From the NCBI RefSeq assembly GCF_001194135.2, contig NC_068995.1, positions 18,415,899 to 18,448,098 of the forward strand: a DNA stretch of 32,200 nucleotides, written 5' to 3'. Each line of letters opens with the position of its first letter. The stretch's first letter is position 1. The stretch comes from Octopus bimaculoides (Eukaryota). Shown here piece by piece: positions 669-27,465 of this stretch. The translations under genes were made by a program, and so were the position numbers. Below the pieces are notes generated by a model, which was given only the letters and a program-made list of their open reading frames with translations, had not been told where the DNA came from and ran no database searches.

Positions 669-1063
669 NNNNNNNNNNNNNNNNNNNNNNNNNNNNNNNN
701 NNNNNNNNNNNNNNNNNNNNNNNNNNNNNNNNNNNNNNNNNNNNNNNNNNNNNNNNNNNNNNNNNNNNNNNNNNNNNNNNNNNNNNNNNNNNNNNNNNNN
801 NNNNNNNNNNNNNNNNNNNNNNNNNNNNNNNNNNNNNNNNNNNNNNNNNNNNNNNNNNNNNNNNNNNNNNNNNNNNNNNNNNNNNNNNNNNNNNNNNNNN
901 NNNNNNNNNNNNNNNNNNNNNNNNNNNNNNNNNNNNNNNNNNNNNNNNNNNNNNNNNNNNNNNNNNNNNNNNNNNNNNNNNNNNNNNNNNNNNNNNNNNN
1001 NNNNNNNNNNNNNNNNNNNNNNNNNNNNNNNNNNNNNNNNNNNNNNNNNNNNNNNNNNNNNNN
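669..1063. other. Assembly gap (N run)
   Basis: Ns. Confidence 1.
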
Positions 1064-4010: not shown

Positions 4011-4230
4011 TCTTCATTTAGTCACAGCATTTGTTTCTTTTGTGGTGGTTTGTTTGTTGCTTTGTTGTTAAGTAGTATGTCAGCACTTGAGTTAGTAGCT
4101 CTGTGACCTAATGCCTTCCAACTGAGGCAATCCCATTTTTATTTGAAGCAAAATACATTTGAGGTCAACCGTTACAATGGGGTATTGTTCAATTTGTTCC
4201 ACCCATTTGAAGTTTTTTGAAAGTTAACAA

Positions 4231-4640
4231 GGAGTGGCTGTGTGGTAAGTAGCTTGCTTACCAACCACATGGTACTGGGTTCAGTCTCACCACGTAGCAC
4301 CTTGGGCAAGTGTCTACTACTATAACCTCAGGCCGACCAAAGCCTTGTGAGTGGATTTGGTGGACGGAAACTGAAAGAAGCCCGTCGTATATATGTGTAT
4401 ATATGTGTATGTGTGTGTATATATGTTTGTGTGTCTGTTTGTCCCCCAACATCGCTTGGGGGACAAACAGATGCTGGTGTGTTTACGTCCTCGTAACTTA
4501 GCGGTTCAGCAAAATAGATCGATAGAATAAGTACTAGGCTTACAAAGAATAAGTCCCGGGGTAGATTTGCTCGACTAAAGGCGTAGCTCCAGCATGATCA
4601 CAGTCAAATGACTGAAGCAATTAAAAGAGAGTGTGAAAGA
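4231..4640 (+). mobile_element. Near full-length tRNA-derived SINE, family A (octopus-type)
   Basis: Head ggagtggctgtgtggtaag...gggttcagtc (A/B-box-like), body accttgggcaagtgtc...ggaaactgaaagaagcccgtcgtatat, an internal TA/TG repeat, and a second half ccgtaacttagcggttc...aaatgactgaa. An inverted homologous copy lies at 22318-22672. Confidence 0.9.
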
Positions 4641-5317: not shown

Positions 5318-5504
5318 TAATATTGATTACAAATTTTGGCACGAGGCCAGCAATTTCGAGGGAAGGGTAACTTATTGTATCGATACCGAAAGAATGAAAG
5401 GCAACGCCAACCGCGGCGGAATTTGAATTCAGAACATGAAGATGGACGAAACACCGATAAGCATTTCGCTCGACGTGCCAACAATTGTGCCAGCTCACTG
5501 CCTT
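5318..5504 (-). mobile_element. tRNA-derived SINE, family B (internally deleted)
   Basis: Minus strand aaggcagtgagctggcacaattgttggcacgtcgagcgaaatgcttatcgg...gaattcaaattccgccgcggttggcgttgcctttcattctttcggtatcgatacaataag...aaattgctggcctcgtgccaaaattt. Homologous to 15212-15436. Confidence 0.85.
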
Positions 5505-8260: not shown

Positions 8261-9760
8261 CGTCCTTCTTCTTCTTCTTCTTCTTCTTCTTCTTCTTCTT
8301 CTTCTTCTTCTTCTTCTTCTTCTTCTTCTTCTTCTTCTTCTTCCAACACTCTCTGTTTGTTGCATGACTTGGCCATGAAATTCGATTTTGTTTCATCTAC
8401 CTGGCCGTTTCATCTACCTGGCCCGTTGTTGTTCTCTTTTTATTTGAATTTCCCTTCTCTTTCAGTTATATTTTGGAAATCTGTAACTATCCATACTCTT
8501 CTTTTTTTCACTTCACACAGCATAATTCTTGAACTCCAGTATGATGCCATTCACAGTATCTTCTGTGTTTAGTAATACTCCGCCTCATACATTTCCTACA
8601 ATTCTTCGTAGATAGAGTATTAATTTCAAGATGGTGTACCTCTTGCATTATTAGCAATTCAACCTTTGTCCATTTCAGAATGAGTTCAGGGCATCTTTAT
8701 ACTGGCATAGCCGATGTATTTATTGCTTTAATGATAATCCTTTCCGCATAATTTTGTTATGAGCATCTTCCTAATTCTCCTGTTGTACAATTAAGAGGTT
8801 GTCTCAGTCATTTCTCAGGTTATTAACCTATCGCTTTTCAGAATCTGCATGTACACGTATTCCTCCTTATTCTACATCGATCTAATGGTGTTTTTTTGTG
8901 ATCATTTTATGCTATCATCGTTTATTTTCTGTCTCTTTTCACAATGAGCTCGTTGCATTTACTTATCCCAAACAGCAGTCTAATATCTTTGCAGAGATCT
9001 CTTACTGCCTGTATGAACGTATTTTTTTTCGCTTTTGTATCTTGTTTTTGGTCATCTGCATAAAACAGGTGATTTATTTTCAACTTGTGTTAGGTAATCT
9101 CGTTTCGATTTTCTCCGTATACTTGCCAGAAGTGTTAATGCAGTGACAGAGTGTCTCCCTCTTAATTTCCTCCGCATATTTTGACCTATCCTAGCAATTC
9201 TTTTGCACATATCATTTCTATTTCGTGCACTGACATTACCTTTTCCAAAAAGCCGTTGATCTTTTCATTCACTACGACAGAGCGTACTCAGTCAAGAGTA
9301 AATATTGTGGGACCTTATCGTAAGCCTGCTAGTGATCTACCCATCTAACACCTCGATTATTCTTTCTAACGCGTACCACATTCAATATCCAATTATACTT
9401 GTACAGCAGATTAGCAGTTCCTCGTGACCTCTTTCTGCATACCTTTTAATCTTCCGGTATTACTTTCCCAGAAAATTGTACACTTCATCTGCTGTGAGGC
9501 CCAGTGTAATAGCAAATATGTTATAAGTCTCTAATTGTTGACTTCCCCTCTCGTTTCTTTTTCCTTCTGTATAGGTACTCTCCTTTCTTTTGTCATCCAT
9601 GTTGTCGTGGATATTTTATGTGACCAGCAAAAGACAGTCGTTCTGAGTCAATTTTCTAATCTTCCTTGCAGTATTTGCATAACTGCTTGACCCAACCTGC
9701 TACACAGTGGAAAAACTCCATGAAGGAGTACTTCAGTTGGGGTTCGGATCTCATAAACTC
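7951..9760 (-). mobile_element. R4/Dong-clade non-LTR retrotransposon remnant (RT plus C-terminus), decayed and internally interrupted
   Basis: Minus-strand motifs in canonical order: TWMTKERRVPIQKEK; KVCRKRSRGTANLL; WVDH*QAYDKVP; VKICGGN*EGDTLS; KINHLFYADD (YADD at 9062-9051); KDIRLLFGISKC; YNRRIRKML...IIKAINT; KWTKVEL; FHGQ; then, after the (TTC)n/(ATC)n tract, IQKTAQHGIAHILHRVLS and a 3' UTR ending in (TAA)n. These are typical of RLE-bearing R4/Dong RTs. Confidence 0.88.
8217..8343. repeat. Compound (ATC)n(TTC)n microsatellite inside the R4/Dong remnant
   Basis: Direct reading. Confidence 0.97.
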
Positions 9761-10140
9761 TAGAGTAATTAATTTTTATTTGGTATTACACTCATAATAA
9801 TTACGGTAGTGATGTGGTATCACAACCACCAAGATTTTGGTGAGGTACCAATTCGAGTAGGTGGCCAATCAAGATTATGTACCCCTCCTCTGTTTTGTTC
9901 TGGGCATTTTCATTCTTATTCATTCTGTTATATCAAGGCGTAATAGGTTCATCAGAAGCATTACTGATAAGAAAAAAAAAACAGACTATATGGATGGCCG
10001 TTGATTCATCAGAGTTCACTCGCCCTTACACGAGTCTAGTTTTCTATCCCACAAGCTTATTAAATAGCGAAAATTAACACTCTCCCTACATCAGTGACTA
10101 TTGTGGCAACTCTATACGCAGTGAATGAAAAACAAGAGTT

Positions 10141-10142
<2 letters not shown>

Positions 10143-10212
<70 letters not shown>
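10143..10212. repeat. (GA)n microsatellite
   Basis: Direct reading. Confidence 0.97.
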
Positions 10213-10214
<2 letters not shown>

Positions 10215-10216
<2 letters not shown>

Positions 10217-10773
10217 TGATATAGTAAGTTAATCGTTTTGGAGATTAATATATAGCGATCTTCAAACAAAGCAAAGACTTTTTACGATGAAAAAATAGTT
10301 CAATTTAGGTTAGAATGTAATTTAAAATTGGAACGTAAATTTAAATCTGTTTCATAAATACAACTTATACACAGAAATGCATGCTGATCTCGCTATGGGA
10401 ACAGCGTAGGGAACCTTATAGTCCTATATCGCAAAACAAAGGCAGCACAAATATCACCGAGAGCTAGAGAACAAGAGATAGAGGGAGCGATATCGAGCAA
10501 GAGAAAAATAGAAACGCTGGTGGGGAAGTTTGTTGCTGTGTGAGGAAAGAAAAAAACAACAAAATTATCACCGATAGAAGAGAACATAATAAAGGGGATA
10601 GCAGAAAGAGAGTGATATAGGAATTTAAACATTGTGGATTAATATACAACGATCTTCAAACAAAAACAAAACCAGTCTTACGCTTAGAATATAGTACAAT
10701 TTGCGTTACAATACAGATTTTAAATCAGTTTCATAAAATGCAAACTTTATACCGACAGACATGATGTTCTCTC
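10215..10773. repeat. Diverged direct duplication, ~170-180 bp units about 396 bp apart
   Basis: Copy 1 (10215-10393) and copy 2 (10611-10773) share agtgatatag, gattaatata..cgatcttcaaacaaa, tttaaatc.gtttcataaa and catg.tg.tctc.c in order. Confidence 0.75.
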
Positions 10774-10789
10774 CAAGATCATGAATTAA

Positions 10790-10920
10790 GCAAATGCCAT
10801 AGCGGCATTTCACCTGTTTTTACGTTTCTATTTCAAATTCCGTCGAAGTAAGTGAAATAATTGCCAGTAGTAAGTGAAATAAGTACAATGTGCTATACAT
10901 GAGGTAGAGCTGATAGCTAG
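10790..10920 (+). mobile_element. Degenerate family B SINE fragment
   Basis: gcaaatgccatagcggcatttcacctgtttttacgtttctatttcaaattccgtcgaag...aataagtac matches the family B head. The central domain is replaced by a 14-bp direct repeat (agtaagtgaaataa). Confidence 0.55.
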
Positions 10921-11399
10921 AAGCGTACTACATGCAGGAGAATTGAAAGGCATTGTTGGTTTCTATATATCTCTTTTCTATTCTGTCAATTTTGTTAACA
11001 ACACAGTCAACACCACCCGCAACAACAATAAATAGAAAATCACAACTGCAATATCACAGGATCGAAACAACGACGTAATAATTATTTAATAAATTGAAAT
11101 GTCCCTTGGAGTTTAGAGGATCAAATGACACTGTTAAAACCTCTTAGAAAGACAAAGCGTTGATGATAAGAAATTAAGAATAAAATTCTCGAGTCCATTT
11201 ACATGTAAAGTGAAAGAACAGTGTGATCTTTGTTGAAAAAAGACATAAGTTTCGGTCTACTTGACCTCATCACCACTATGTCTACTACAGCCTACAAATC
11301 AGTGAATACAAATCAGTTTATAAAAGTGCGTGTGCTTATTTAATATTTGTATCCGACAAGAAAGTAAGAGAGTATATCGTATATCATATTCACAAACAA

Positions 11400-11573
11400 T
11401 ATACACACACACACACACACACACACATACACACACATACAGACAGACACAAACACACACACACATACACACACACACACATACATACACACACAAGTAC
11501 ATACACACACATATATGTATATGTATGCATATATGTATGTTCTACCTCATTAATAATCAATGCNNNNNNNNNN

Positions 11574-11627
<54 letters not shown>

Positions 11628-11770
11628 AATACACATATAGATATATATACATACAAATACACACACACATATACATATACATACATACGTGCATGAATAT
11701 GAATTTATGCATATGTATTTTAAATGTCCCTGTGTATGTAAGTATATACATGTGTATCTGTGTTTGGCGG
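11400..11770. repeat. (CA)n/(TA)n mixed repeats with a 10-N gap (11564-11573)
   Basis: Direct reading. Confidence 0.92.
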
Positions 11771-12257
11771 TGTCTGTGTGCATGTGACTATGTATATATT
11801 TACACTGACAGACGAAAGTTTGTTCACGTTATCACATTCATTTATCTTTCATTACCTCTAACAACTATGACTAATGCTAGACTGGGTACTCTATTTCGCA
11901 TGAAAGAACATTAAATGTACTGTTAATTCTCACAGATTACAGTTTACCAATAAATCTGATTTGATGTTTTATTTGCTGTAGGGAGAGCGAGGCTTGGGGA
12001 TATTTCAACAATTGTTCTAATTGAAGTGAGCAGATAACTTCACATAGGGTTCATCCTTAAGCAATTTATGTAAAAACAAAAGCAAAATACATAAAAAATT
12101 CCCCAAATCACCAGTTTTTTTTATATCCCTGTTTGTTAAGTAAATGTTTGCAATCTATATGGTAAGGAATGCAGACTCCTGAGACCTTATTGTAGACAAT
12201 TAGATTCATGTTTTACATTTAAACTGTAGTGCAGTCATTAAAATGTCAATGCATTTA

Positions 12258-12270
12258 TACACACACGCAC

Positions 12271-12366
<96 letters not shown>

Positions 12367-12376
12367 ACACACACAG
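12258..12376. repeat. (CA)n microsatellite
   Basis: Direct reading. Confidence 0.97.
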
Positions 12377-13039
12377 ACATACGTAACTGTGTACATATGC
12401 GTAGGTTTGAGTGTTAAGGAAAGTGTTTGTATGTAATTTAATAATTGAACTAATACATTTTCCTTAATTGTATAATTTTCTTAATTGCAGAGAAGTTAAG
12501 TTAATTAGGTAAATATAGCTATATTTATATATTCCTCTATGTATATGTGCAAATATGTATGGTTGAATAAATAGATTCATACATACATACAAACACTCAA
12601 TATGTAAAGGGTTATATGCATATGTTATTAAATGTGTAGTTATGTGTGCATAAATGTATGTGCCTCTACTTATCGGTCAATACATTGTATGGAATATAAA
12701 TGAAGCAAAGATATTAACTACGTCATTCAATCTACATATGAAAAATAAAGTGTTTAACTAAATTTAGTGCTGTTATTCCTCAAAATCTGCAAGCGGAAAG
12801 TCGTCACAAACATCGGATTGCGTCAAAAACTTCTCTTACATGTATGTAGAGAGTTTCAGAATAATATAGACAAACGCGTGAATGATAAAGTTTAAAACGC
12901 TACCAAATCAAAAGTGACACAATCCCATTGCAATTTTTTCCAGCTCAACGTCATTATTAATATAAACGCTTTGGGTAATAATTCGGTTAAGATATTCTAA
13001 AGTTTTGGAAGGCACGTAACCTCGCAAAATTCCTAGATT

Positions 13040-13254
13040 TAAAGCAAAACCATTTTGCGACAATGCCTGTAAGTCCAAGCATGTTTCTGACATTCCAGGA
13101 AGCAATTGACAATTTCTTGACACCTCGACTGCAATAGAGGAGCGACTCACCAGGCTCGTCTTCCCTACCGGGAAGATGCGGGTTCTGTGCCCGTCACAGG
13201 CCACCAGTACCATCCATGACCGCCTCCGCCATCAGTCGCCCATCACCGATGGAC

Positions 13255-13255
<1 letters not shown>
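13040..13255 (-). mobile_element. RTE-clade LINE 5' end (5' region plus start of the APE endonuclease), truncated
   Basis: Minus frame ...SRGVKKLSIASWNVRNML (WNV at 13097-13089) matches the APE motif I (L.I..WNVR). A shifted frame, LDLQALSQNGFA, resembles DIAALSETR. A GC-rich leader lies upstream. Confidence 0.7.
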
Positions 13256-13256
<1 letters not shown>

Positions 13257-13289
<33 letters not shown>

Positions 13290-13312
13290 GGAGTGAGAGA
13301 GATAGAGAGAGA
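13257..13312. repeat. (GA)n microsatellite
   Basis: Direct reading. Confidence 0.9.
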
Positions 13313-13379
13313 AGGGGCGGGGCGAGATACTGCAGGAAGAAGGTTCGGAAAGATGAAAAGCTACGTAAATGTTTGTTCC

Positions 13380-14170
13380 CAATGATGAGAAGGAGGCACG
13401 ATACCTCACGACATAATTTGACGTATCCTTACCTGATCAAGTAAGGATACTTGATGTGGGATGTGGGATGACTGGGAATATGGACAAACTGCTGCTAGCG
13501 GCCGCTCAAAGCCCACAAATTTGGCTCTCATACATGATATTAACAATGTATTTGACTGCTGGCAAACTTCCATATAAACATTTCCCATAGATTCTGCATC
13601 AATTCCTCGCAACTTGACTTAGTTTGCTTTCCTCCAAGAATCTTGATCGAGCTCTATATAACATTATATCAACGACGCTTTGTCGTACTTAGCAAAATCT
13701 AATTTGTTTCACTTCCAATAACTGGTGCTCGCACGTAGATGATACTACCCAAATTTCATCCCCCGCTATTTATTACATTCACTTCATGAAGAAATACTAA
13801 ACATGCATCATTCACGCTAGTGTTCCCTTTAGTAACACGACACAATCACTGCACATATGCACAAAGCATTAACGTAAATACCTTCCCCTAAAATATATGC
13901 AGCCTGCATCTAGAGTCCTGAAGGTTACTATAAATGCAATTCTTTAGGCTTCTCAATATTATGACATCCTAAAATGCATACAACCAATCTGGGCTTCATT
14001 AGCATGCTATCGCATTCTAGCACACTCATGTTTTACGACTACTAGAAAATCTTGTGCTCCGCGGATCTGCCTGACCTGGAGCCAACTCCATTCAGACATT
14101 CTCACGTAACTGTCTATCTTCCTCGTTGTGAAAAATATTTTGTTAATTGTTTGATTATGCTTTAAACTCA
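13380..14170 (+). mobile_element. Decayed CR1-like LINE RT/3' remnant
   Basis: Broken frames LALIHDINNVFDCWQ (cf. ALDISKAFD.VWH), HYINDAL (cf. YINDL), HVDDTT (cf. FADDTT) and HSHVTVYLPRCEKYFVN (cf. H.F.V.IPRC....N) occur in canonical order. Confidence 0.55.
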
Positions 14171-14654
14171 ACGCATACAGACACCCAACATCTCCATCTC
14201 CATCACCATCACCATCACTATCCGAACAAAAAGGTGGACATCTTGAATATCTTCATAATTATTTCTAATCATAGACCAGCTATTGTTCAAGAGGAACATT
14301 AACAGTGTTCGTCACATTGGCCTAGAAATTGTTGCTACTGTCATGAGTGAAGTGGTTTACAAATACAAAGAGAAACATCTAGACTGTATAGAAGCTTATA
14401 TTGTAATACAAGGACAAAATGTGTTTATATACAATGCATACAAGGCGTCATCATAATTTCTGTAAAGGGGTATCAATTTAATTGAATTCAAACGAGACAG
14501 GGTTTCAATGATTTGCAGTTTTGCTAGCTACATGGACGGAAAGATCAATATTTAGCTTTAAAGCAATCTTATGTAGTTTTCGTGTCAGAATATTCTTTAA
14601 AGTTGATAAGACGATGTGCAGCAACACAAAACCGCAACCAAACGCAAAATAATA

Positions 14655-15090
14655 TGAGGACTGAAGACAGATACTTACATTTTTGGCCAAGCCTTCATCG
14701 ACTTTTACAAGTTCCAGGCAAGTGAGGTTGGAGAGGGAAGTAGTGAAAGCCCCACCAAACCAGTACTTTTGCTGAAAAGTGACAGAATGTGGCGAGGGTG
14801 AGGATGGCCCATATGAATGGGTCTACTCTGAATGAATGCCTGTAGACCGGAGGAGTTTAGAACGCGAGAGGTACCTGCCTCGGGTACTTGGAGGTTGGAG
14901 TGACCAGAAAACGGGGCATTTCGGCCTTAGGTCGGACTCCTCCCTTTTAGGGAATTTTATTGTTTAAATTTTGTTCTTTATTTTTATTGCTTTATTTGTA
15001 TAAACGTATTCTTGTGCTAAGCCTCACATGTCCCTTGTTTTACATTCTCCTTTTTGCTTAGTGTTCGTCACTTATGACTAATAAGAAAAA
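14655..15090 (+). mobile_element. L1/Tx1-like LINE 3' end
   Basis: Frames GLKTDTYIFGQAFIDFYKF / QVRLEREVV / FAEK*QNVARVRMAHMNGSTL, then a T-rich 3' UTR and aataagaaaaa. Recognised from memory as an octopus Tx1-like ORF2 C-terminus and not database-checked. Confidence 0.55.
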
Positions 15091-15091
15091 C

Positions 15092-15128
15092 GTTATTATT
15101 ATCATTATTGTTATTGTTGTTGTTGTTG

Positions 15129-15182
<54 letters not shown>

Positions 15183-15210
15183 TTTATTATTATTATCATT
15201 ATCATTATTA
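15092..15210. repeat. (ATT)n/(GTT)n microsatellite
   Basis: Direct reading. Confidence 0.95.
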
Positions 15211-15211
15211 T

Positions 15212-15436
15212 GGCAGCGAGCTGGCAGGGTTGTTAGTTCGCCTGACACAATGGTTAGCGGCATTTCGTCCGTCTTTACGATCTGTGTTCTAATTCTACCC
15301 AGGTCGACGTTGCCTTTCATCCTTTCAAGGTCGATAAATTAAGTACGAGTGAAACACTGAGGTCAATGCATTCGACCAGATCCTTCACCCAAGATTTCAG
15401 GCCTTGTGCCTTTAGTAGAAAGTATTATTATTATTA
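15212..15436 (+). mobile_element. Full-length family B tRNA-derived SINE with an (ATT)n tail
   Basis: ggcagcgagctggcagggttgttag (A-box-like)...gtgttctaattc (B-box-like), central gttgcctttcatcctttcaaggtcgataaattaagtac, and 3' atttcaggccttgtgcctttagtagaaag(tat)n. Confidence 0.88.
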
Positions 15437-15890
15437 TGCCTTCGTAACATAGTGTAGGAGTCATTAGTTATCTGTTAAGTCAACAAAACCACAGACAGAT
15501 AATACTTTCCTTAAGATATCCGCTCTACCCAATAAGGCTGGGATTTCCAGTTGCCTTGAGAAATTTTGAAGTTTCATTGGGATTGAGCCCAACGCTCCGA
15601 TCACCACTGGCATCACTTCTGCGTTACCCTCTCGTATTCCATACAGTCTTGCCATTTCCACTTTCAATTCGAAGTACTTGATGATTTTTTCGAACTCTTC
15701 TCACAACATTCATGTCATTTGGTATGGCTACACCAATGACTTGACAGCTATTATTATTAGCTGGCCGCCTACACTTTTTTCTGAAAAATAGGGGTAGTTT
15801 ATCCTGTTCAGGCAATATTATTAGCATTATCATGCGTTTGAGAATTTAAAATCACTTCTTTAACTTTCTAAGACACCTCAACGCTTCTAA
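15437..15890 (-). mobile_element. 5'-truncated R4/Dong-clade element: restriction-like endonuclease (RLE) C-terminus plus 3' UTR
   Basis: Track ORFs 15624-15833 (RRPANNNSCQVIGVAIPNDMNVVRR, cf. RPDIV..K...IIDVA.P.D) and 15464-15667 (KVEMARLYG...VMPVVIGALGSIPMKL...ALLGRADILRKVL, cf. PVVIGALG...ALLGTA.ILRKVL). The element ends in (TAA)n. Confidence 0.88.
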
Positions 15891-15931
15891 AAGCAAACTT
15901 CGTTTGTTTGTTTACGTTTATCGTAAAATGA

Positions 15932-15998
<67 letters not shown>

Positions 15999-16000
15999 GT

Positions 16001-16037
<37 letters not shown>

Positions 16038-16054
16038 TGCAGCAGCAGCAGCAG

Positions 16055-16121
<67 letters not shown>

Positions 16122-16122
16122 C
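15932..16122. repeat. Compound (ATT)n(GTA)n(GCA)n microsatellite
   Basis: Direct reading. Confidence 0.96.
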
Positions 16123-16779
16123 GTGATATTGCTATTTACGATAACGGTTGTTGTGTGTTATGCATTTATTTCATGATTAATATTCCAGTATAGAAAGTAG
16201 AAATAATTTTGAATTGCTACGGTTTCTCATTGGAGTCTAATACATTCGTTTGAAAATCTTTAAAGACACATTGTCTAGAGTTCTTTTGGAATCTATAGTC
16301 AGATTAACGTACACGCTTGATTTAAGATCAATATTTACCAAAAGGTTTGCTATTGAGTAATCAAGAAAAATCAATATAACCGTGAAAGCATTTTCCATAA
16401 TAATTATGCCTGAAAAATACCTGATTGTAAACAAAGATACGTGCGTTTTGCAATGGCATAAATACCAATCGAAGACCAAACTCATCGATCATTTTGAAGA
16501 AGGTTATAATTAAATAATTCATAAACGAATAATGAATATAAACTCGTGTTTCATTTTTGCAGATAGTACACGTAATGTTGTAGATAGTAATATAATAAAC
16601 AGGTTTAATTATAGTATTAGAATGAGCATAAAACTGGATTTACTTTTGGAGTTAGTCTAGTCACTTAAATCGATCTCAACATCGGCCTTTTGGAGTGAAA
16701 GTAAGAACAAAAAATTGGGAGCATGAATAATGAAAGTATAAAAGTGATTGGTGCCAGCACATGGTTACATGGTTACGTG

Positions 16780-17050
16780 CGAATGAGAGCTAGCAGTACC
16801 CTTCATAAGACAGTGCGCTGTGTTTAGTTCGCAAGATGTAAAATTTGTGTTTTTGTGATCACGTCTATGCTGTAACCTGAGATTTTGTCAGGGTCGGGAA
16901 GTTGAAACAAGGAGCCAACGTGAAATTTTGTATTAAACTTGGAAAGTCGACTACAGTGCTGCAGAGACATCGATCATACTCCAGTAAGATTACAGTGACG
17001 CTGCAATGCGACGTACGTAATATTTCTTGTGGCACGAACGCTTCAAAAGA
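16780..17050 (+). mobile_element. Mariner (Tc1/mariner) transposase N-terminal remnant
   Basis: LKQGANVKFCIKLGKS then, after a frameshift, AAETSIILQ*DYSDAAMRRT*YFLWHERFK. This matches the mariner HTH start EQR..IKFC.KLGKSA.ET..ML...YGD.AM.RT..F.W..RFK. Confidence 0.8.
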
Positions 17051-17072
17051 TATATATATATATATATATATA

Positions 17073-17354
17073 NNNNNNNNNNNNNNNNNNNNNNNNNNNN
17101 NNNNNNNNNNNNNNNNNNNNNNNNNNNNNNNNNNNNNNNNNNNNNNNNNNNNNNNNNNNNNNNNNNNNNNNNNNNNNNNNNNNNNNNNNNNNNNNNNNNN
17201 NNNNNNNNNNNNNNNNNNNNNNNNNNNNNNNNNNNNNNNNNNNNNNNNNNNNNNNNNNNNNNNNNNNNNNNNNNNNNNNNNNNNNNNNNNNNNNNNNNNN
17301 NNNNNNNNNNNNNNNNNNNNNNNNNNNNNNNNNNNNNNNNNNNNNNNNNNNNNN
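17073..17354. other. Assembly gap within (TA)n
   Basis: Ns flanked by TA repeats. Confidence 1.
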
Positions 17355-17393
17355 ATATATATATATATATATATAGCAGAAAATAAAAAATAT

Positions 17394-17545
17394 CTGGCAC
17401 GTTCGTGAGAATACCGGAGAAAATGCTCACCAGCAATTCGTTCAACTTAACATTCTGAATTCAGAGTACACCGAAGTCGTCTTTGCTTTTTACCCTTTCA
17501 GGGTCGATTGAAAAAATATCAGTTCAGCAACGGTGTCCACGACTA
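17394..17545 (+). mobile_element. Degenerate family B SINE
   Basis: ctggcacgttcgtgagaataccggagaaaatgctc...ctgaattcagagtacaccgaagtcgtctttgctttttaccctttcagggtcgattgaaaa. Confidence 0.65.
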
Positions 17546-17582
17546 ATACCACTCTCCAAAATTTCTCGCTTTGTGACTGCTG

Positions 17583-17915
17583 AAACCCCCTTCGGTCACG
17601 ACTGACCATAGGATTGCACTTAGAAAGTTACCCTTCAAGGCACGAGTCCGGGCAAGGTTGTTTATGGAAGACCAGCAGTTGCGCATGTATACCGGCCTTC
17701 CCTCTCCACTACCGGTGTTATCCAATGGAAAAGCAAAGGCTGATACAGCTTGGCACCAATGACGTCGCAACTCATTTCTACAGCGGAGTGAACAGGAGCA
17801 ACGTGAAATATAGTGTCTTGCTCAAGAACACAACGCGCAACCCGGTCTGGGATTCGAACTCACGACCTCACGATCGTAAGCTCGACGCTCTAACCACTGA
17901 GCCATGTGCCTTCAC
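17583..17915 (-). mobile_element. Near full-length tRNA-derived SINE, family C
   Basis: Minus strand gtgaaggcacatggctcagtggttagagcg (A box TGGCTCAGTGG)...gagttcgaatcc (B box), then gtgttcttgagcaagacact...cactccgctgtagaaatgag and a unique 3' body ending gaccgaagggggtttc. Confidence 0.85.
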
Positions 17916-19674
17916 ATGTGTTTTCTGACCAATTCGCATCCCCAAATTTCCACAGCTACACATGCACACACGAACACGTCAATATCACCAGCCCTCTTTC
18001 ACACACACATACATACTCTTATACACAAGCGCACCTTCGCTTTGGGATCACTACTAATTTCTTATCTCCCCTTCTTCTTAGCTCACTTGTGTGACCCTTC
18101 TGTCCGGTATTCGTCATGATAGATCGCTAACCGCTACACACATTTTTTTTTTCTCTCCTTGTTTCTTTCTGTGTTCCTTTGGGTGGAAGAGCGTAGGCTC
18201 GAAATGTTAAAGACTTTTTTCAATTTCCGAACGTTATACTAATACAGCTATTGTTTTCTACACACCATGTCTTCGTCTTTTTTTTTTTTTGTGAAGTCTC
18301 CCTACATATATATATAACGCGTTCCATCTGAGGGACATAAGATTAAGGCCGCTACATGTCACTCTGTATAATGTTTCGCAGTTTCCTAAAAGCATTCTTT
18401 CAAAGTATCACAATTGCAACACACTTAGTAAGGCAGATTAGAAAGTTTTGGGCTTTTTGGAAGAGACAACGATGATAACCCGAAATTTACTTAAGGATCC
18501 TCTCCGGCTATTAATGCATGTTCCGATCATATCCGCTTGTCCACATGATATTTGCAAGCATGGTTTTGCTGAAACTTTCTGCGTTTATCCCATTAGCCAC
18601 AGTAGAGCAATATCTTATGTCAACGAGAACGACACATATGACGCGTTCTCTTATTAACGTTAGTCCTTATTTCATGAAAATAGCAGATACTATTTTCCTC
18701 TACTTTCCATTTGAGTAAATATCTTCCAAATTCTTCTTAGCTCACATAAAGTTTTTAATTGTTTTCTTTTGCTATAAAAACTTAAGTCAATTACGATATT
18801 TCATTGCTTTTATTATTTTTTAACAACATGCAAAGTATTTTATGCATTTTGCTAGTTCTTGCTGTCTTTGTATCTTCTGTTTGTCTGACTCCCTGTTTTC
18901 GTCTGTCTGCCTCTGTCTCCATTACTCTGCCTCACTATATTTCTTTCCCTCTTTCTCTCTCCCTATATGTATATATATATTTATATTTATACACACACAC
19001 ATATGTATATATATGTGGGTGTGTGTGCGTCTGGGTGTTTTTGTTTTGTGTGTGTGAGCGTGTGTGAGAGTGTGTGTGCAGCATTTTTTTAGCCTGAATA
19101 TTATTGAATAATATGCTTACAAGTAATACAGTAGAACGTAATATATTTTCGGGAGATATATATATATAAATTTTATGCTCTTGATATAAAAGTGTAAGAA
19201 AGGCTATTGTCACCGCGTATTCATATCGCATTGATACACCAATGTAAAGTGTTTTACACATGACTGTTTCACTATTTATAGCAAATGAGGTGATTTACAA
19301 ATGTCCTTATTCAAAAGTATATAACCAGTGATATCAGAGAGTCTATTAACATGCAGGAATGGTTCGGAGCCAAAATATGTGGGAGTCTTCATTGAGTTTT
19401 CACGTAGATATAACAATATCACGTTGAAACATATATTTATTTTGGGCACAGGCTAAACGCCAAACCTTTGCATAGCCTTTATAGTGAATTACAAATAAGA
19501 ATGAGTGAGTTATTTGCGGGCAACGTTTTGATCGTTACTCCTTGTATATAATGTGTTTCGGTTTACTGTTTAAACAATACTCTTTACTAAATAATCGAGT
19601 TTACTAATGTCTTTACAGTCATCTATGAAGTATGATAGTATGAAACCAGAAGCAAGAGATCGCACACTAGACAC

Positions 19675-20120
19675 ACACACACACACACACACGCACACAC
19701 ACACAAACACGCACACACATACACAGACACACCCTTACTCACGCATTCGTATCGATAAATTCATGTTTCATTTCCCTCCATATTTGTCTCTCCTACTATC
19801 AGCATTCCTCCCTTTCTTGCTCTTTCCTTCCCTCTCTTCCTCCTTTCCCTCTTTCTTTATGCATACACACACACACATACACGCGCACACATATATATGA
19901 ATATACGTACGAGCACATATATTTATAAGTATATACATGTATCTACACATAAACATATACGTGTGTGTGTATGTGCGTGTGTGTGTGAGTGTCTGTCTGT
20001 CTGTCTCCCTGCCAGTCTATCTGTCTGTCTGTCTGTGTGTGTCTGTGCATGTGTCTGCGCGTGATGTGTATTTGTATGGTGGGTAGAGTGTATGTATTGA
20101 TGTGCGTATGTGTATATACG
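19675..20120. repeat. Mixed (CA)n/(TG)n/(CTGT)n simple repeats
   Basis: Direct reading. Confidence 0.85.
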
Positions 20121-20517
20121 TAAGTTTCACTATTTACAATATTTGATCATGTTTGTACATCAGAGATATTTATCTTGTGGATCACATATTTGACAACATA
20201 ACATTTTTTCTGAAAAGAAAAGAAAAAAATCCCCAAAACCCCCAAAAATAAACAAATACTTAAAATAAACATATTGGAATCATACAGCGGGATAATTTCA
20301 AATAAATTTTTAAAATAGAAGCATCGCAATTATAAAATTTGCTGTTTTGTGTTGTGTGTTCAAATGCGTGTTAATCATTCGTCTGCAAGTATCAATTAAA
20401 CATAATTATAGAGAGGCGAGCTGTTTGTATTGTTGGTTGCATCATTTACGTAACGTACAACAAACACTCCCACAAACAGTCGAAAGGGAGAAAATTGTAA
20501 TGTTATGGAAAACAGCG

Positions 20518-20574
<57 letters not shown>

Positions 20575-20600
20575 TTGATAATAACAATAATAAATGAAGT
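20518..20600. repeat. (AAT)n microsatellite
   Basis: Direct reading. Confidence 0.95.
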
Positions 20601-21231
20601 GTATAATGATAGTCCATATCCGAAAACAACAGCGATATTAATAATAAAAATATTAATTGCTATCAACTACAAACAACAAAACAATAACTATAATAATGTA
20701 GCCGAAAAAGGAAGGAAGAAAGAAAGGAGAGAATGTGTGGAATAAAAAGAGAATAAGAAAAAAAATTGCCATCGTCTTCACAAAATATTGACTAGTCTTT
20801 GCCAAACTTGCTGACCCCTAATGATGAGCGATCTTTCAAGGCGTCCTGAATAAAGGGAAACCCATTTCCAATTGACGACTAAACCTGCCAATATTTGTCT
20901 CTCAAAGCATAATTGATAGCTATTATAAATGTGTGTGACCTCGGCAAGTCTTGAAACGATTTCAAAACAAGCTCGCTATTTTGATAACGGGGAGAATAAA
21001 AAAATCAGCTTATTGACTTTTTTCCCTTGCGTTTACGCCAAGCTTTCAACCTGCCAATGCATCTCTTTCTATATTTGTTATTTTTCCTTTTGTTTAGGTG
21101 TAGGATTATTAGATCATTTTGCGATTTGTTTATATAAGGAAGTATTTCTAAACATTAAATATATTTATATGCATACGTATAGATACACATAGAGCACAAA
21201 CAACATACATACAAGCACGCGCGAGCGCGCC

Positions 21232-21236
<5 letters not shown>

Positions 21237-21288
<52 letters not shown>

Positions 21289-21586
21289 NNNNNNNNNNNN
21301 NNNNNNNNNNNNNNNNNNNNNNNNNNNNNNNNNNNNNNNNNNNNNNNNNNNNNNNNNNNNNNNNNNNNNNNNNNNNNNNNNNNNNNNNNNNNNNNNNNNN
21401 NNNNNNNNNNNNNNNNNNNNNNNNNNNNNNNNNNNNNNNNNNNNNNNNNNNNNNNNNNNNNNNNNNNNNNNNNNNNNNNNNNNNNNNNNNNNNNNNNNNN
21501 NNNNNNNNNNNNNNNNNNNNNNNNNNNNNNNNNNNNNNNNNNNNNNNNNNNNNNNNNNNNNNNNNNNNNNNNNNNNNNNNNNNNNN

Positions 21587-21666
<80 letters not shown>

Positions 21667-21690
21667 AATAAATAAATAGATAGATAGATA
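21237..21690. repeat. (CA)n, gap (N 21289-21586), then (TA)n(GA)n(GATA)n
   Basis: Direct reading. Confidence 0.95.
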
Positions 21691-22317
21691 GATAGACACG
21701 TATGCAATTGTATAAAACGACACACTACAACGGTTAGTTTTGTAATGCATTCTGACACCTAGGATTTCCGGTAGCATTTTCAAGCAAGATGACAGTTCGC
21801 TTACCTCAGCCGCACCTGCGAAATTGGCCACAACTTTTTTTCTTTATCCCGCGACTTCCATATTTTCAACTACCATCCGTTTTCACTCTCTACAATCCAT
21901 CCACATTTTATTTCCAATGCATTATCGAATGACTCTTTTGACTACATGAAAGTGACCTAAGCACAACCCATCGATAGCTACCTTTCTTTAAGTGTGCTTC
22001 TATCCGTGTAATTTAATTGCGTATCTAATTTCTATCATCTATAATCAATCTAGATATTTTTATAATCTCGCCCTGTTTAACACATCTCCTTTACTCAAAT
22101 CTGAAAAAGGATTTGTTAACGGATAAAAATAATGTAAGCTATGCGTAACTGAAGGATGTCAGATCCTTTCCAGATCTAAGAACTGTGCTGTGAGCATATG
22201 GCTAAGTTCTTGTTGAGGAACTGGAAAGTGCCACCCTTCTTTGGATTGAACAGCTGTACCATAGACTCCAAGCTACTATCTTTTCAGTTTATATTTTACT
22301 GTAAAAGGGCAAATAAC

Positions 22318-22672
22318 TCTTTAGTCGAACAAATCGACCCCAGGACTTATTTTTGTAAGCGTAGTACTTATTGTATCGGTTCTTTTGCCGAACTGCTAAG
22401 TTACGGGGACGTAAACAAATCACCATCGGTTGTCAAGCGATTGTGGGGGAACAAACACAGACACAGACACACACAGACACACAGACACACGCACAGATAT
22501 AATATATACGGTGGGCTTCTTTCAGTTTCCGTCTACCAAAACCACTCACGAGGATTTGGTCGGCCCGAGGCTATAGTAGAAGACACTTGCCCAAGGTACC
22601 ACGCAGTGGGACTGAACCCAGGGCCTTGTGGTTTTTAAGCAAGATACTTACCACACATCAACTCCTGCGCCT
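22318..22672 (-). mobile_element. Family A tRNA-derived SINE, inverted relative to 4231-4640
   Basis: Reverse complement aggcgcaggagttgatgtgtggtaag...ctgggttcagtcccactgcgtggtaccttgggcaagtgtcttctactatagcctcgggccgacc... is collinear with the copy at 4231. Confidence 0.9.
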
Positions 22673-22780
22673 ATTGTGTTTATTTGTTTTTTTAATACCA
22701 AGTTTTTGAAGCATTTATTAAGACCTTCTAACATTCGTATCCTGAAATATGAAGCTGCTGATTTTGCACTTTAATCTTAC

Positions 22781-22970
22781 CTGTTTGATATAATTGACCT
22801 CTCATCAAGTTCTTGAATTCATGTAAGAAAATATTTTCTGACCATAATTTTGTTTTACTTTTGCTTTTAGTTCTAGTTGGCCTGAAGTGGTGGAGAGGCA
22901 TTTTCCGTAGTGTAGGTGGCAGTAAATTTAGCAGTAGTGTCTCTTTTCTCACTTTTGTACCAAAAGACAT
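22781..22970 (-). CDS. Candidate first coding exon of an unknown minus-strand gene (MSFG... or MPLHHFRPTRTKSKSKTKLWSENIFLHEFKNLMRGQLYQT|)
   Basis: A non-repetitive open frame with ATGs at 22970 and 22901 (both with A at -3) ends at the consensus donor CAG|GTAAGA (22781|22780). It lies immediately downstream of the promoter-like motif cluster. No family was recognised. Confidence 0.35.
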
Positions 22971-22979
22971 GATGTTCTC

Positions 22980-23051
22980 GTCACATGATGAGTGGTAGAC
23001 TACTTTATCATGCGACCGTTTTCAGACCAATAGCTAGTCGTTTGGGCGTGG
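22980..23051. promoter_or_regulatory. Candidate core/proximal promoter (E-box, CCAAT box, GC box), possibly bidirectional
   Basis: GTCACATGA 22980-22988, CCAAT 23027-23031 and GGGCGTGG 23044-23051. About 12 CpG were counted by eye in 22900-23180, well above the surrounding background. Confidence 0.45.
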
Positions 23052-23059
23052 TTTAAAAA

Positions 23060-23173
23060 AAAGAAGAAGATTCTTAGAAAACATTTCATGCTCGGTTTCC
23101 AGTTTCAGAGCTCCGAGTTCCCGGTGCTTTCTTACGTTCTCCATTCCTGTTGTTCGAAGTTGCTGTAAGGTTC
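23060..23173 (+). other. Candidate non-coding first exon of a plus-strand gene (5' boundary approximate)
   Basis: A CpG-rich segment downstream of the GC box ends at TTC|GTAAGT (23174-23179), followed by an AT-rich intron-like stretch. Confidence 0.3.
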
Positions 23174-23279
23174 GTAAGTAAAACTTTTCCTCTTAACCAA
23201 CCTAAATAAAAATAAGAATTAATCAATTAATTGATTCAGTAATTAAACAAACTTTATATGTATTGCACTGGCCCATCAA

Positions 23280-23420
23280 AAGTAGTGTGCTTGCAAGTGC
23301 AAGTATGCTTATTGGCGCATGTATGCCTGTTTGTGTGCGTATGTGTGTGTGCATGTGAGTGTGTGCATGTGAGTGTGTGTAAGCGCGTGTGCACGTTCGT
23401 GTGAATGTGTGTGCATGTGG
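23280..23420. repeat. Degenerate (TG)n/(GTGCAT)n repeat
   Basis: Direct reading. Confidence 0.75.
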
Positions 23421-23501
23421 GTGGTATGCAAGCTGATTTATTTTTTATGTTTCTTGCTTGCATAACATGTATAAATAAGTTTGCGATCAAATACAATCTT
23501 T

Positions 23502-23670
23502 GCACGTCGGAGAAAATGGGTTGTGGCAGTTTTATGGCTTAACGTTTCGAGTTCAAATTCTGCTGAGGTCTACTTTACCCTTCATCCTTTCGGTGTAGAT
23601 AGAATATATACCGGTTAAGCGTAGGTCTAGATGTAATCGACTACCGTCTAGGAATTCAGTCCATGTGCAT
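23502..23670 (+). mobile_element. Degenerate family B SINE (5'-clipped)
   Basis: gcacgtcggagaaaatg...gagttcaaattctgctgaggtctactttacccttcatcctttcggtgtagataga...gatgtaatcgacta. Confidence 0.75.
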
Positions 23671-25700: not shown

Positions 25701-27465
25701 TCAAAATATCCAGTACTCACAAATTAAAACTCAAGCCAAGTACTGAAAATCATCGCTCTACTTACCCACTCGTTCCACTATCGATCTACCCGGAAGTCTG
25801 AATTACACACTAAACATCTAAACAGGTTAAGCGACACAAGCCATTGAGTGGCGAAGAATTACATCCCCGTGTACCGAGTTCTCTTCGGTGATGTCTGCTC
25901 CTACTGCTGCCCTGTATTTATTCAGTACTGTGTAGAACACTTCACACTCCTGTGTCTGGCTTAATAAAAGTAACGTGGTGTCCGTAATACGAAAGAATAT
26001 GAGTCAAAACCCTTAAATCTCTACCTCTTAACAAATGTCTTCAGAGTCACAAAAAAATATCTTTCTGGATCTATGACGGAGAATCTCACCGGGGGACACT
26101 GTATGTGTTGCAAAATTGCAGCAATAACTGACCATTTTTATAATCATTCTACATACGCCGTTATACATTGAAAAAAAACAGACTTTGAGAAAAAAATCGA
26201 AAGGGGATAATAAAACGGACTGCCGCTAATTCTATAATGGTTATCATTTTGAATGTTCTGAATTGCTCCAAGTGGATCAGAGCTACGATATATCACAAGA
26301 AGTGGACTGTGATGCAAAGAAAATTGCTGAGAATTTTCCTTCAGTTGCAGTGCCATAAGCGTGTATGACAGAAATTTATTCCTCTATTGTCCCTTTATAC
26401 TTTTTTAAACAGACTCGATTGTTTTTAATGTTAATGAGTTTATCACCTAAAATTTTTCGTACTTTTTATAATAAGTTTAAACTACGGACTTCCCCTAGGT
26501 TATTCTTGAGCTGAATAATATGGATATTATTTAATTTTCTTTCTTGTCATGTATATGATGATGGGGGACGGAGAGTGCCTGCTATTGATAGGAACTGTAA
26601 TCTGGCGAGAAAATTTACATATGCTTTGCAATGTATTATAACTGTATATAGTTATAATACATCCTTTAATGTGAAAGATAGAATGAATTTGAATGAGCAT
26701 TATTTACTTGTCTATATTTCAAACTCTCATTTTGGCGTTCGATGCATATAAAATGTGGGGATATATATATTATTGGAAAGGCCAGAGATGCGCGAAATCA
26801 CGTGAGCTGGTAGTCGTGGTAGTAGCTATGTATAGTTATGTAAACAAGAATGCGTATGTGCACCTGAAGCCAATATGAGAGTTTCTTTCATGGTAACTAT
26901 CACAATATTCTGTATCCCAACACAACATCCAGGTTTAAGTGGCGATATATATTATCCTTTGATATTAATACTGCTTCTGTCGCTAACAAATATTTTGACA
27001 TAAAACCACTGGCTATTCGCGACACTAGTGTTTGTTTAGGTACTGTGATTCTAAATATATCACTCGCAGATACATCGCTGTTATTGTCTTCGTCTGTCGC
27101 CTGCTATTGACAATGCTAAGGAAGGCCGAAATCAAGTGATCTGGTAGTCTCGGCTGTTGCGATTGCAGATGATTTATCTCCATGCTAGCAATGTAAACAA
27201 GAGTCTTTATACTCACAGAAAACCAACATAAGAGTTACTCTTACGTTAACCATCGCAGTATTGTGTATTCTAACAGGGCATTCGATTTTAAGCTGGGATA
27301 AATATTACAGTATGGTATTAATACTGATTATGTCGCTAATAATTGTACACCCACACACATATATATAAAGAGGGAAAGAGAGAGAGAGAGAGAGTAGGGA
27401 AGGAGGGAGCATCAACTCTGTGCATCAGTAAAACAGCCTCTTCACCATTTAACCTTCATCTTATC

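What the first reader, a model, noticed from the sequence alone, without database searches (positions are those of the whole stretch)
22775..23179. Candidate bidirectional (head-to-head) promoter with outward-facing first exons
Seen: within ~400 bp of non-repeat, CpG-enriched sequence lie an E-box/M-box (GTCACATGA, 22980), a CCAAT box (23027) and a GC/KLF box (GGGCGTGG, 23044). A minus-strand donor CAG|GTAAGA at 22780 closes a 40-63 codon open frame, and a plus-strand donor GTAAGT lies at 23174. Known: NF-Y plus SP/KLF plus E-box combinations and CpG retention typify TATA-less bidirectional promoters. Inference: two unannotated genes may diverge from here, and most of the window would then be their first introns.
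Basis: partly seen in the sequence, partly recalled or inferred. Interest (0 to 1): 0.7.

Follow-up and report, generated by a model that had tools for sequence, protein, structure and literature searches.

The report
Unproven promoter-like motif cluster
A 400-base stretch of non-coding animal (octopus-like) DNA carries a few short promoter-like and splice-like motifs, but no test available here separates them clearly from chance, so it is probably ordinary spacer DNA and at best an ordinary, unconfirmed promoter.

Summary
These are the E-box TCACATGA (22981), GACCAATAG (23025), GGGCGTGG (23044), the minus-strand donor CAG|GTAAGA (exon end 22781) closing a 63/40-codon ATG frame, and a plus-strand GTAAGT (23174).

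The supporting claims are weaker:
- CpG observed/expected is 0.79 in the region against 0.83 for the whole window, so there is no enrichment. In octopus most intergenic CpGs are unmethylated anyway.
- "Non-repeat" holds only inside the window, and 77% of the window shares that property.
- No motif is over-represented. A cluster of three or more motif kinds arises in 7% of simulated windows, and a second one lies at about 13227.
- An ATG frame of 60 or more codons ending in a strong donor arises in 4.5% of simulations.
- The 63-codon frame has no Pfam match and no true homologue among 1.84 billion representative proteins. It shows no codon-position signal, has G at first codon position in only 6 of 63 codons, and lacks Ala and Asp.
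- The plus-strand donors are mediocre.

No transcript, chromatin, copy-number or cross-species data could be reached. Best reading: ordinary non-coding spacer between SINE and microsatellite insertions (about 0.5). A real promoter of some orientation is about 0.3, and the bidirectional two-gene model as written about 0.08. Interest is low.

The parts
22400..22683 (-). SINE copy in minus orientation with an internal (ACAGAC)n-type microsatellite at 22451-22497. It forms the left boundary of the unique block.
   Evidence: 81% identical to an inverted copy at 4230-4497. TRF rows. Calling it a cephalopod SINE rests on my recall and was not tested.
22775..22783 (-). Donor-like site CAG|GTAAGA; the last exon base would be 22781.
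   Evidence: Sequence. It is the only AGGTAAGW in the window, against 2.0 expected by chance. It ranks 3rd of 3731 GT sites on a generic donor matrix.
22782..22970 (-). 63-codon ATG-initiated open frame (MSFGTKVRKE...GQLYQT), with an internal ATG 40 codons before the donor. The stop-free frame spans 22731-23021.
   Evidence: No Pfam domain. No true homologue. GC by codon position is 0.35/0.37/0.32, G at first codon position is 6 of 63, and there is no Ala or Asp.
22980..23016 (.). E-box/M-box-like GTCACATGATGA (22980-22991, +) and an imperfect inverted copy GTCGCATGATAA (23005-23016, -).
   Evidence: The pattern was derived from the two copies themselves. By my estimate, 10-of-12 inverted repeats at this spacing are expected about 100 times in 32 kb.
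23025..23033 (+). CCAAT box in NF-Y-like context (GACCAATAG).
   Evidence: 2 matches to RRCCAATVR in the window, against 6.0 expected in shuffles.
23044..23051 (+). GC/KLF (CACCC-type) box GGGCGTGG.
   Evidence: the only match in the window, 0.13 expected, and 12 of 100 shuffles have at least one.
23051..23069 (+). A/T-rich run TTTAAAAAAAAGAAGAAG. It could be a TATA-like element for a plus-strand TSS near 23083, or an A-rich retroposon tail.
   Evidence: Sequence only; both readings are inference.
23127..23179 (+). Pyrimidine-rich stretch CTTTCTTACGTTCTCC followed by two donor-like sites, GCT|GTAAGG (23165) and TTC|GTAAGT (23174). This would be the putative short non-coding plus-strand first exon.
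   Evidence: Sequence. The donors rank 169 and 504 of 3731. GTAAGT occurs 12 times on the + strand of the window. The ATG at 23088 gives only 26 codons and stops at 23166-23168.
23316..23423 (.). TG-rich microsatellite (14-nt unit TGTGTGCATGTGAG). It forms the right boundary of the unique block.
23538..23606 (+). Fragment of a second short interspersed repeat family.
   Evidence: Copies at 5373-5441 and 15273-15326, 74-76% identical.

Best explanation
The segment 22667-23319 is most likely an ordinary stretch of non-coding DNA, intergenic or deep intronic. It lies between a SINE insertion on the left and a microsatellite plus a second SINE fragment on the right. Short transcription-factor-like motifs (E-box, CCAAT, KLF/GC box) and splice-donor-like hexamers happen to co-occur there. 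No gene product is made from the 63-codon frame, which is a chance open frame of the kind that is common in this window. On this reading there is no mechanism to describe: the motifs are not jointly used as a promoter.
For: 1. None of the motifs is over-represented against dinucleotide shuffles.
2. Clusters of at least 3 promoter-motif kinds occur in 7% of simulated windows. A second one occurs in this same window at about 13227, inside what looks like a decayed LINE.
3. CpG o/e is 0.79, no higher than the window's 0.83. In Octopus bimaculoides under 10% of CpGs are methylated and intergenic DNA is largely unmethylated (PMC9476566). CpG retention therefore carries no promoter signal.
4. The open frame has no Pfam match and no hit in the word-indexed search. 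The exhaustive search of 1.84 billion representatives gave only two spurious hits to translated tandem repeats.
5. The frame is compositionally flat across codon positions (GC 0.35/0.37/0.32), has G in first position in only 6 of 63 codons, and lacks Ala and Asp. Typical coding sequence has about 25-30% G at first position (general knowledge).
6. At least 10 stop-free frames of 97 or more codons exist in the window.
7. The plus-strand donors are unremarkable. GTAAGT occurs 21 times in the window, including inside the SINE copies.
8. No near-identical protein matches any stop-free frame of at least 35 aa on the outward strands.
9. Being unique within the window is shared by 77% of the window.
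Against: 1. The window's only GGGCGTGG, one of its two good CCAAT contexts, its only TCACATGA and its only AGGTAAGW all fall within 270 bp.
2. The minus-strand donor is the third best of 3731 GT sites.
3. An ATG frame of at least 60 codons ending in such a donor is seen in only 4.5% of simulated windows.
4. Only about 2% of positions in the window are flanked by outward-facing donors.
5. The order CCAAT, CACCC-type box, A/T run, then a CA dinucleotide 31 nt further on is what a classical Pol II promoter looks like.
6. The negative protein searches are weak. LINE-like control frames in the same query also found nothing, so remote homologues would have been missed. A first exon may also be non-coding.
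Confidence: 0.5

Rival explanations
1. A genuine RNA polymerase II promoter that fires in one direction only. The plus-strand version has CCAAT (23027), a KLF/CACCC box (23044) and a TATA-like A/T run (23051). These would place a TSS near 23083, or at the pyrimidine stretch at 23127, giving a short non-coding first exon spliced at 23164 or 23173. The minus-strand version has the same NF-Y/KLF sites acting in inverted orientation, a TSS around 22940-23000, and a first exon ending at the strong donor at 22781. That exon would more likely belong to a long non-coding RNA or be a 5' UTR than code for protein.
For: The motif order and spacing fit classical promoters (inference from general knowledge). 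The motifs are unique or nearly unique in the window. The minus-strand donor ranks 3 of 3731. The joint arrangement is uncommon under placement and simulation nulls. Rough prior: one TSS per some tens of kb in a roughly 2.7-Gb genome (my knowledge).
Against: No transcript evidence could be obtained. There is no CpG or composition change at the site. The plus-strand donors are weak on the exon side. The A/T run is not a consensus TATA box, and no match to the Inr pattern TCAGTY or to the TCT pattern YYCTTTYY lies at either predicted TSS. No downstream conserved exon was found. The motif choice was post hoc.
Confidence: 0.22
2. One reading: a shared TATA-less bidirectional promoter (NF-Y plus SP/KLF plus E-box) from which two unannotated genes diverge. 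The first exons would end at 22781 (-) and 23173 (+), and most of the window would be their first introns.
For: The same motif and donor evidence as above. NF-Y-dependent head-to-head pairs separated by less than 1 kb are well documented in vertebrates (PMC5372550, PMC2713978).
Against: It requires both directions to be real. The CpG-island character typical of such promoters is absent. The 63-codon 'coding' exon is an orphan with non-coding-like composition. The plus-strand exon has no usable ORF: the ATG at 23088 runs into a stop at 23166. No exon of either putative gene is detectable in the remaining 22.8 kb or 9 kb. Window-wide CpG o/e of 0.83 gives no sign of gene-body methylation, which in octopus marks highly expressed genes.
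Confidence: 0.08
3. The 650-bp block is a fragment of an old or low-copy transposable element. One candidate is a roughly 230-bp retroposon at about 22840-23069 ending in the A-rich tail AAAAAAAAGAAGAAG; another is a piece of an LTR or LINE 5' region. The promoter-like motifs would then belong to that element.
For: An A-rich run sits at 23054-23069. It is followed by ATTCTTAGAAAACATTTC, which loosely resembles ATTCATGTAAGAAAATATTTTC at 22818. That pair could be a degenerate target-site duplication (my reading). The window is full of SINE and LINE debris. The other motif cluster in the window (about 13227) sits in LINE-like sequence.
Against: There is no second copy in the window. No tRNA-like head was detected. 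No TE protein domain was found. The putative duplication is weak and AT-rich.
Confidence: 0.15

Closest known systems
Vertebrate head-to-head (bidirectional) promoters driven by NF-Y, such as the PRR11-SKA2 pair (PMC5372550); pairs separated by less than 1 kb (PMC2713978)
   Same: A CCAAT box in good NF-Y context lies next to a GC/KLF box and an E-box within 70 bp. Donor-like sites face outward about 390 bp apart.
   Different: There is no CpG island or GC rise (GC 0.39, CpG o/e 0.79). Neither flanking gene is demonstrated. One 'exon' is an orphan frame and the other has no ORF. An A/T run occupies the TATA position. The organism is an invertebrate with sparse gene-body methylation, so CpG-island logic does not transfer.
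Classical CCAAT / CACCC / TATA unidirectional promoters, the beta-globin type (from my knowledge, not tested)
   Same: On the plus strand the order is CCAAT (23027), CACCC-type KLF site (23044), A/T-rich element (23051) and a CA dinucleotide about 31 nt downstream.
   Different: The CCAAT-to-A/T-run spacing is 24 bp rather than about 45 bp. TTTAAAAAAAA is not a consensus TATA box. No downstream coding exon was identified.
TOP/TCT-type promoters of ribosomal-protein and snoRNA-host genes (from my knowledge)
   Same: A pyrimidine stretch (CTTTCTT, 23127) is followed by a very short ATG-less exon and a GTAAGT donor.
   Different: The stretch does not match the strict YYCTTTYY pattern. No ribosomal-protein exon or snoRNA was found downstream.

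Membership tests
Bidirectional (head-to-head) promoter | Two transcription start sites on opposite strands less than 1 kb apart | not testable with these tools
   No RNA-seq, CAGE or annotation for the source genome can be reached. The public DNA collections searched hold no cephalopod sequence.
Bidirectional (head-to-head) promoter | Two real genes diverging from the interval | tested here: inconclusive
   The minus-strand 63-codon frame has no real homologue or domain. No near-identical protein matches any outward-strand frame of at least 35 aa. Those searches would miss non-coding genes and remote homologues.
Bidirectional (head-to-head) promoter | CpG-island or GC-rich character (vertebrate definition) | tested here: not met
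   GC is 0.39 and CpG o/e 0.79, against 0.35 and 0.83 for the window.
Bidirectional (head-to-head) promoter | Presence of NF-Y, SP/KLF or E-box type motifs | tested here: met
   GACCAATAG at 23025, GGGCGTGG at 23044 and TCACATGA at 22981. These are sequence matches only; no binding is shown.
Bidirectional (head-to-head) promoter | TATA-less | tested here: inconclusive
   There is no TATAWAWR match, but TTTAAAAAAAA at 23051 sits in a TATA-like position.
Protein-coding first exon | ATG, open frame and a consensus donor | tested here: met
   The ATG at 22970 opens 63 codons up to CAG|GTAAGA at 22781. This occurs by chance in 4.5% of simulated windows.
Protein-coding first exon | Homologues or a coding-type composition | tested here: not met
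   There are no true hits among 1.84 billion representatives. GC is flat across codon positions, G at first position is 9.5%, and there is no Ala or Asp.
Transposable element / SINE | Multiple dispersed copies | tested here: inconclusive
   There is no second copy within the 32.2-kb window. Genome-wide copy number cannot be tested.
Structured non-coding RNA gene | Match to a known RNA family or tRNA | tested here: not met
   No tRNA. No Rfam hit at gathering score. The relaxed scan gives only far-sub-threshold hits in the microsatellite.

The most novel reading that the evidence does not exclude
A genuine divergent NF-Y/KLF/E-box promoter in a cephalopod genome. It would drive a lineage-specific orphan gene on the minus strand, whose first exon encodes the basic 63-residue peptide MSFGTKVRKE..., and a short-first-exon non-coding transcript on the plus strand. 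That would be an example of de novo gene birth next to a SINE insertion.
Probability: 0.06. Interest if true: 0.3.

Novelty: not a real feature. Interest (0 to 1): 0.12.

Why it matters
If real, this would be one more unannotated promoter, possibly with an orphan or non-coding transcript, in a cephalopod genome. That would help annotation but would not surprise anyone. The practical lesson is methodological. In an AT-rich, sparsely methylated invertebrate genome, vertebrate promoter heuristics are not reliable on their own. CpG retention, CCAAT plus GC box, and GTAAGT hexamers all occur at near-chance rates, and also inside SINE and LINE debris. Such calls need transcript or chromatin data.

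Tried and rejected
1. Word-indexed protein search with the 63-aa frame gave nothing.
2. I concatenated all stop-free frames of at least 35 aa that passed a low-complexity filter. Two queries of about 4950 aa then found nothing at E <= 1e-3. LINE-like frames included as a positive control also found nothing, so this design only detects near-identical proteins. I treat it as a weak negative.
3. Exhaustive phmmer of the 63-aa frame gave two hits. Both were rejected on inspection as translated tandem repeats, in which a roughly 16-residue match is summed over 5-11 repeats.
4. Pfam on the frame and on suspected TE fragments gave no significant family. My LINE and mariner labels therefore remain recall-based.
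5. tRNA and Rfam scans found nothing.
6. The sigma-70 promoter and intrinsic-terminator scan is irrelevant to a eukaryote and was empty.
7. Exact-match scans of JGI metagenome contigs for the promoter core and for the SINE core both returned 0. That collection therefore says nothing about copy number.
8. The 12-nt inverted repeat GTCRCATGATRA is not evidence. The pattern was derived from the data, and 10-of-12 inverted repeats at that spacing are expected about 100 times in 32 kb.
9. A literature search for octopus TSS or ATAC resources returned nothing specific.
10. I did not use the look-up of encoding contigs or the listing of cluster members. Searches already show that none of the window frames searched there is in that collection.

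Full report
**What the window is.** The 32.2-kb window is AT-rich (GC 0.35). It has four assembly gaps (985 N in total) bordered by microsatellites, many simple repeats, and several short interspersed repeats present in more than one copy. It contains no tRNA gene and no Rfam family at gathering score. No long non-repetitive ORF is present. This fits a gene-poor part of an animal genome.

**Checking the observation.**
- The minus-strand ATG at 22970 opens 63 codons plus one base up to the donor. An internal ATG gives 40 codons. The stop-free frame extends over 22731-23021.
- The CpG claim fails. CpG observed/expected is 0.79 in 22775-23179, against 0.83 for the window and a median of 0.86 for 400-bp windows. 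Only 22950-23180 reaches 1.10, still under the window's 90th percentile.
- The non-repeat claim is weak. The block 22667-23319 has no second copy in the window. That is also true of 21 blocks making up 77% of the window.
- The block is bounded on the left by a SINE at about 22400-22683, which has a copy at 4230-4497. On the right it is bounded by a TG-rich microsatellite at 23316-23423 and a second repeat family at 23538-23606.

**Is it more than chance?**
- Individually, no. The CCAAT pattern occurs 2 times against 6.0 expected, TCACATGA 1 against 1.9, and AGGTAAGW 1 against 2.0. GGGCGTGG occurs once against 0.13 expected, but 12% of shuffles have at least one.
- For the cluster, I scanned a predefined panel of 14 promoter motifs in 11 groups. 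The finding ties for the densest 200-bp cluster in the window, with 3 groups. Another 3-group cluster lies at about 13227. In addition, 22 of 300 first-order Markov simulations reach 3 or more groups.
- An ATG frame of at least 60 codons ending in AGGTRAG arises in 4.5% of simulated windows. The real window has a second such event of 52 codons, with its donor at 13433 (-).
- Keeping the real donor positions and placing a 70-bp cluster at random, about 2% of positions have a strong minus-strand donor within 400 bp on the left and a plus-strand GTRAGT within 400 bp on the right.
- The constellation is therefore mildly unusual, at the level of a few percent per window under realistic nulls. It was picked post hoc by a reader free to choose among many motifs.

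**The putative coding exon.**
- The 63-aa peptide MSFGTKVRKETLLLNLLPPTLRKMPLHHFRPTRTKSKSKTKLWSENIFLHEFKNLMRGQLYQT has no Pfam match.
- It has no hit in the word-indexed search of 5.8 billion proteins.
- The exhaustive HMMER search of 1.84 billion cluster representatives gave two hits. Both are translated tandem repeats, in which a short LPPTLR..PLH-type match is counted 5-11 times. They are spurious.
- GC content is flat over the three codon positions (0.35, 0.37, 0.32) and equals the background. G occupies the first codon position in only 6 of 63 codons, and the peptide has no Ala and no Asp.
- From general knowledge, coding sequence has roughly 25-30% G at first position and about 12% Ala plus Asp. 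This composition looks like translated AT-rich non-coding DNA.
- Stop-free frames of this length are common here, with at least ten of 97 or more codons. I conclude the frame is probably not a coding exon. That does not exclude a non-coding first exon.

**The donors.** I scored sites with a generic metazoan donor matrix, whose weights come from my memory, against the window's base composition. CAG|GTAAGA ranks 3rd of 3731 GT sites. GCT|GTAAGG ranks 169th and TTC|GTAAGT 504th. The matrix probably undervalues a perfect intron-side GTAAGT. Even so, that hexamer occurs 21 times in the window, including inside both SINE copies. The plus-strand ATG at 23088 gives 26 codons and stops at 23166, so a plus-strand exon would be non-coding.

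**Searching for the rest of the two proposed genes.** I concatenated all stop-free frames of at least 35 aa that passed a low-complexity filter and searched them in two queries. The first covered the plus strand downstream of 22990 and the minus strand over 9651-23030. The second covered the rest of the minus strand, some plus-strand frames and suspected TE frames. Neither gave any hit at E <= 1e-3. The LINE-like control frames also found nothing. I therefore read this only as showing that no near-identical protein in that collection is encoded here. Remote homologues and short exons would be missed.

**External DNA.** Exact-match scans of the metagenome collection for the promoter core and for the SINE core shared by both in-window copies both found nothing. 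The collection holds no DNA of this kind of organism. Copy number and cross-species conservation remain untested.

**Context from the literature.** In Octopus bimaculoides fewer than 10% of CpGs are methylated. Over 85% of CpGs are intergenic and mostly unmethylated, and methylation concentrates on the bodies of a subset of highly expressed genes (PMC9476566). Two things follow. CpG retention cannot flag promoters in such a genome. The window-wide CpG o/e of 0.83 also gives no hint that the window is the intron of a heavily methylated, highly expressed gene.

**How it most likely works.** My estimates are as follows.
- About 0.5: nothing is transcribed from here, and the motifs are a coincidence in spacer DNA.
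- About 0.22: the site is a real promoter firing in one direction. On the plus strand the order is CCAAT (23027), CACCC-type box (23044), A/T run (23051) and a CA dinucleotide at 23082-23083, about 31 nt downstream. That would give an 80-90-nt non-coding first exon. Alternatively, the pyrimidine stretch at 23127 gives a roughly 40-nt exon. On the minus strand the same sites in inverted orientation would place a TSS near 22940-23000, with an exon ending at the excellent donor at 22781.
- About 0.08: the full bidirectional two-gene model.
- About 0.15: an old transposable-element fragment, for example a roughly 230-bp retroposon ending in the A-rich run at 23054-23069.

All steps beyond the presence of the motifs are inference.

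**Comparison with known systems and novelty.** The closest known systems are vertebrate NF-Y bidirectional promoters, classical CCAAT/CACCC/TATA promoters, and TOP-type promoters. The segment shares motif content with each. It fails or cannot be tested on their defining properties: paired TSSs, CpG-island character, and real flanking genes. Even if confirmed, it would be an ordinary new member of a known kind. As it stands I classify it as not demonstrably a real feature, and its interest is low.

Noticed in passing
window 12900-13650 (minus strand): This is the most GC-rich stretch of the window (GC 0.49 in 13001-13500). It holds a (GA)n run, GGGGCGGGGC, and a YY1/CRE/GC motif cluster at about 13227. 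The window's best donor-like site, CAG|GTAAGG at 13432 (-), lies inside a 28-nt palindrome (GTATCCTTACCTGATCAAGTAAGGATAC). Frames such as ...KKLSIASWNVRNMLG... and ...LDLQALSQNGF... remind me of the N-terminus of a LINE apurinic-endonuclease domain. It is probably a decayed LINE 5' region, and it shows that promoter-like clusters plus top donors occur in TE debris here. Pfam did not confirm this.
   Followed up: partly
window 15467-15845 (-) and 8925-9264 (-): The frame EEFEKIIKYFELKVEMARLYGIREGNAEVMPVVIGALGSIPMKLQNF... resembles the conserved C-terminal tail seen in many invertebrate LINE ORF2 proteins. HKLKINHLFYADDQK... resembles a reverse-transcriptase YADD motif. Both are recall-based; Pfam and the protein search gave nothing.
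   Followed up: partly
window 16902-17050 (+): The frame MKQGANVKFCIKLGKSTTVLQ... resembles the HTH region of mariner/Tc1-type transposases. It runs into an assembly gap (17073-17354). Pfam did not confirm it.
   Followed up: partly
window 26780-26810: An E2F-like GCGCGAAA (TTTCGCGC on the minus strand) lies immediately next to a perfect E-box, TCACGTGA. This is the other compact promoter-like motif pair in the window.
   Followed up: no
window 669-1063, 11564-11573, 17073-17354, 21289-21586: There are four runs of N (395, 10, 282 and 298 bases), each bordered by TA, CA or GA microsatellites. These are assembly gaps at simple repeats, which suggests a short-read scaffold assembly.
   Followed up: no
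window 22651 (-) and 4245 (+): Both copies of the SINE carry GTG|GTAAGT, a strong donor-like site. If the SINE is as abundant genome-wide as I recall, donor-like hexamers would be widespread, which lowers their value as evidence for exons.
   Followed up: partly
It is probably chance.
   Followed up: yes
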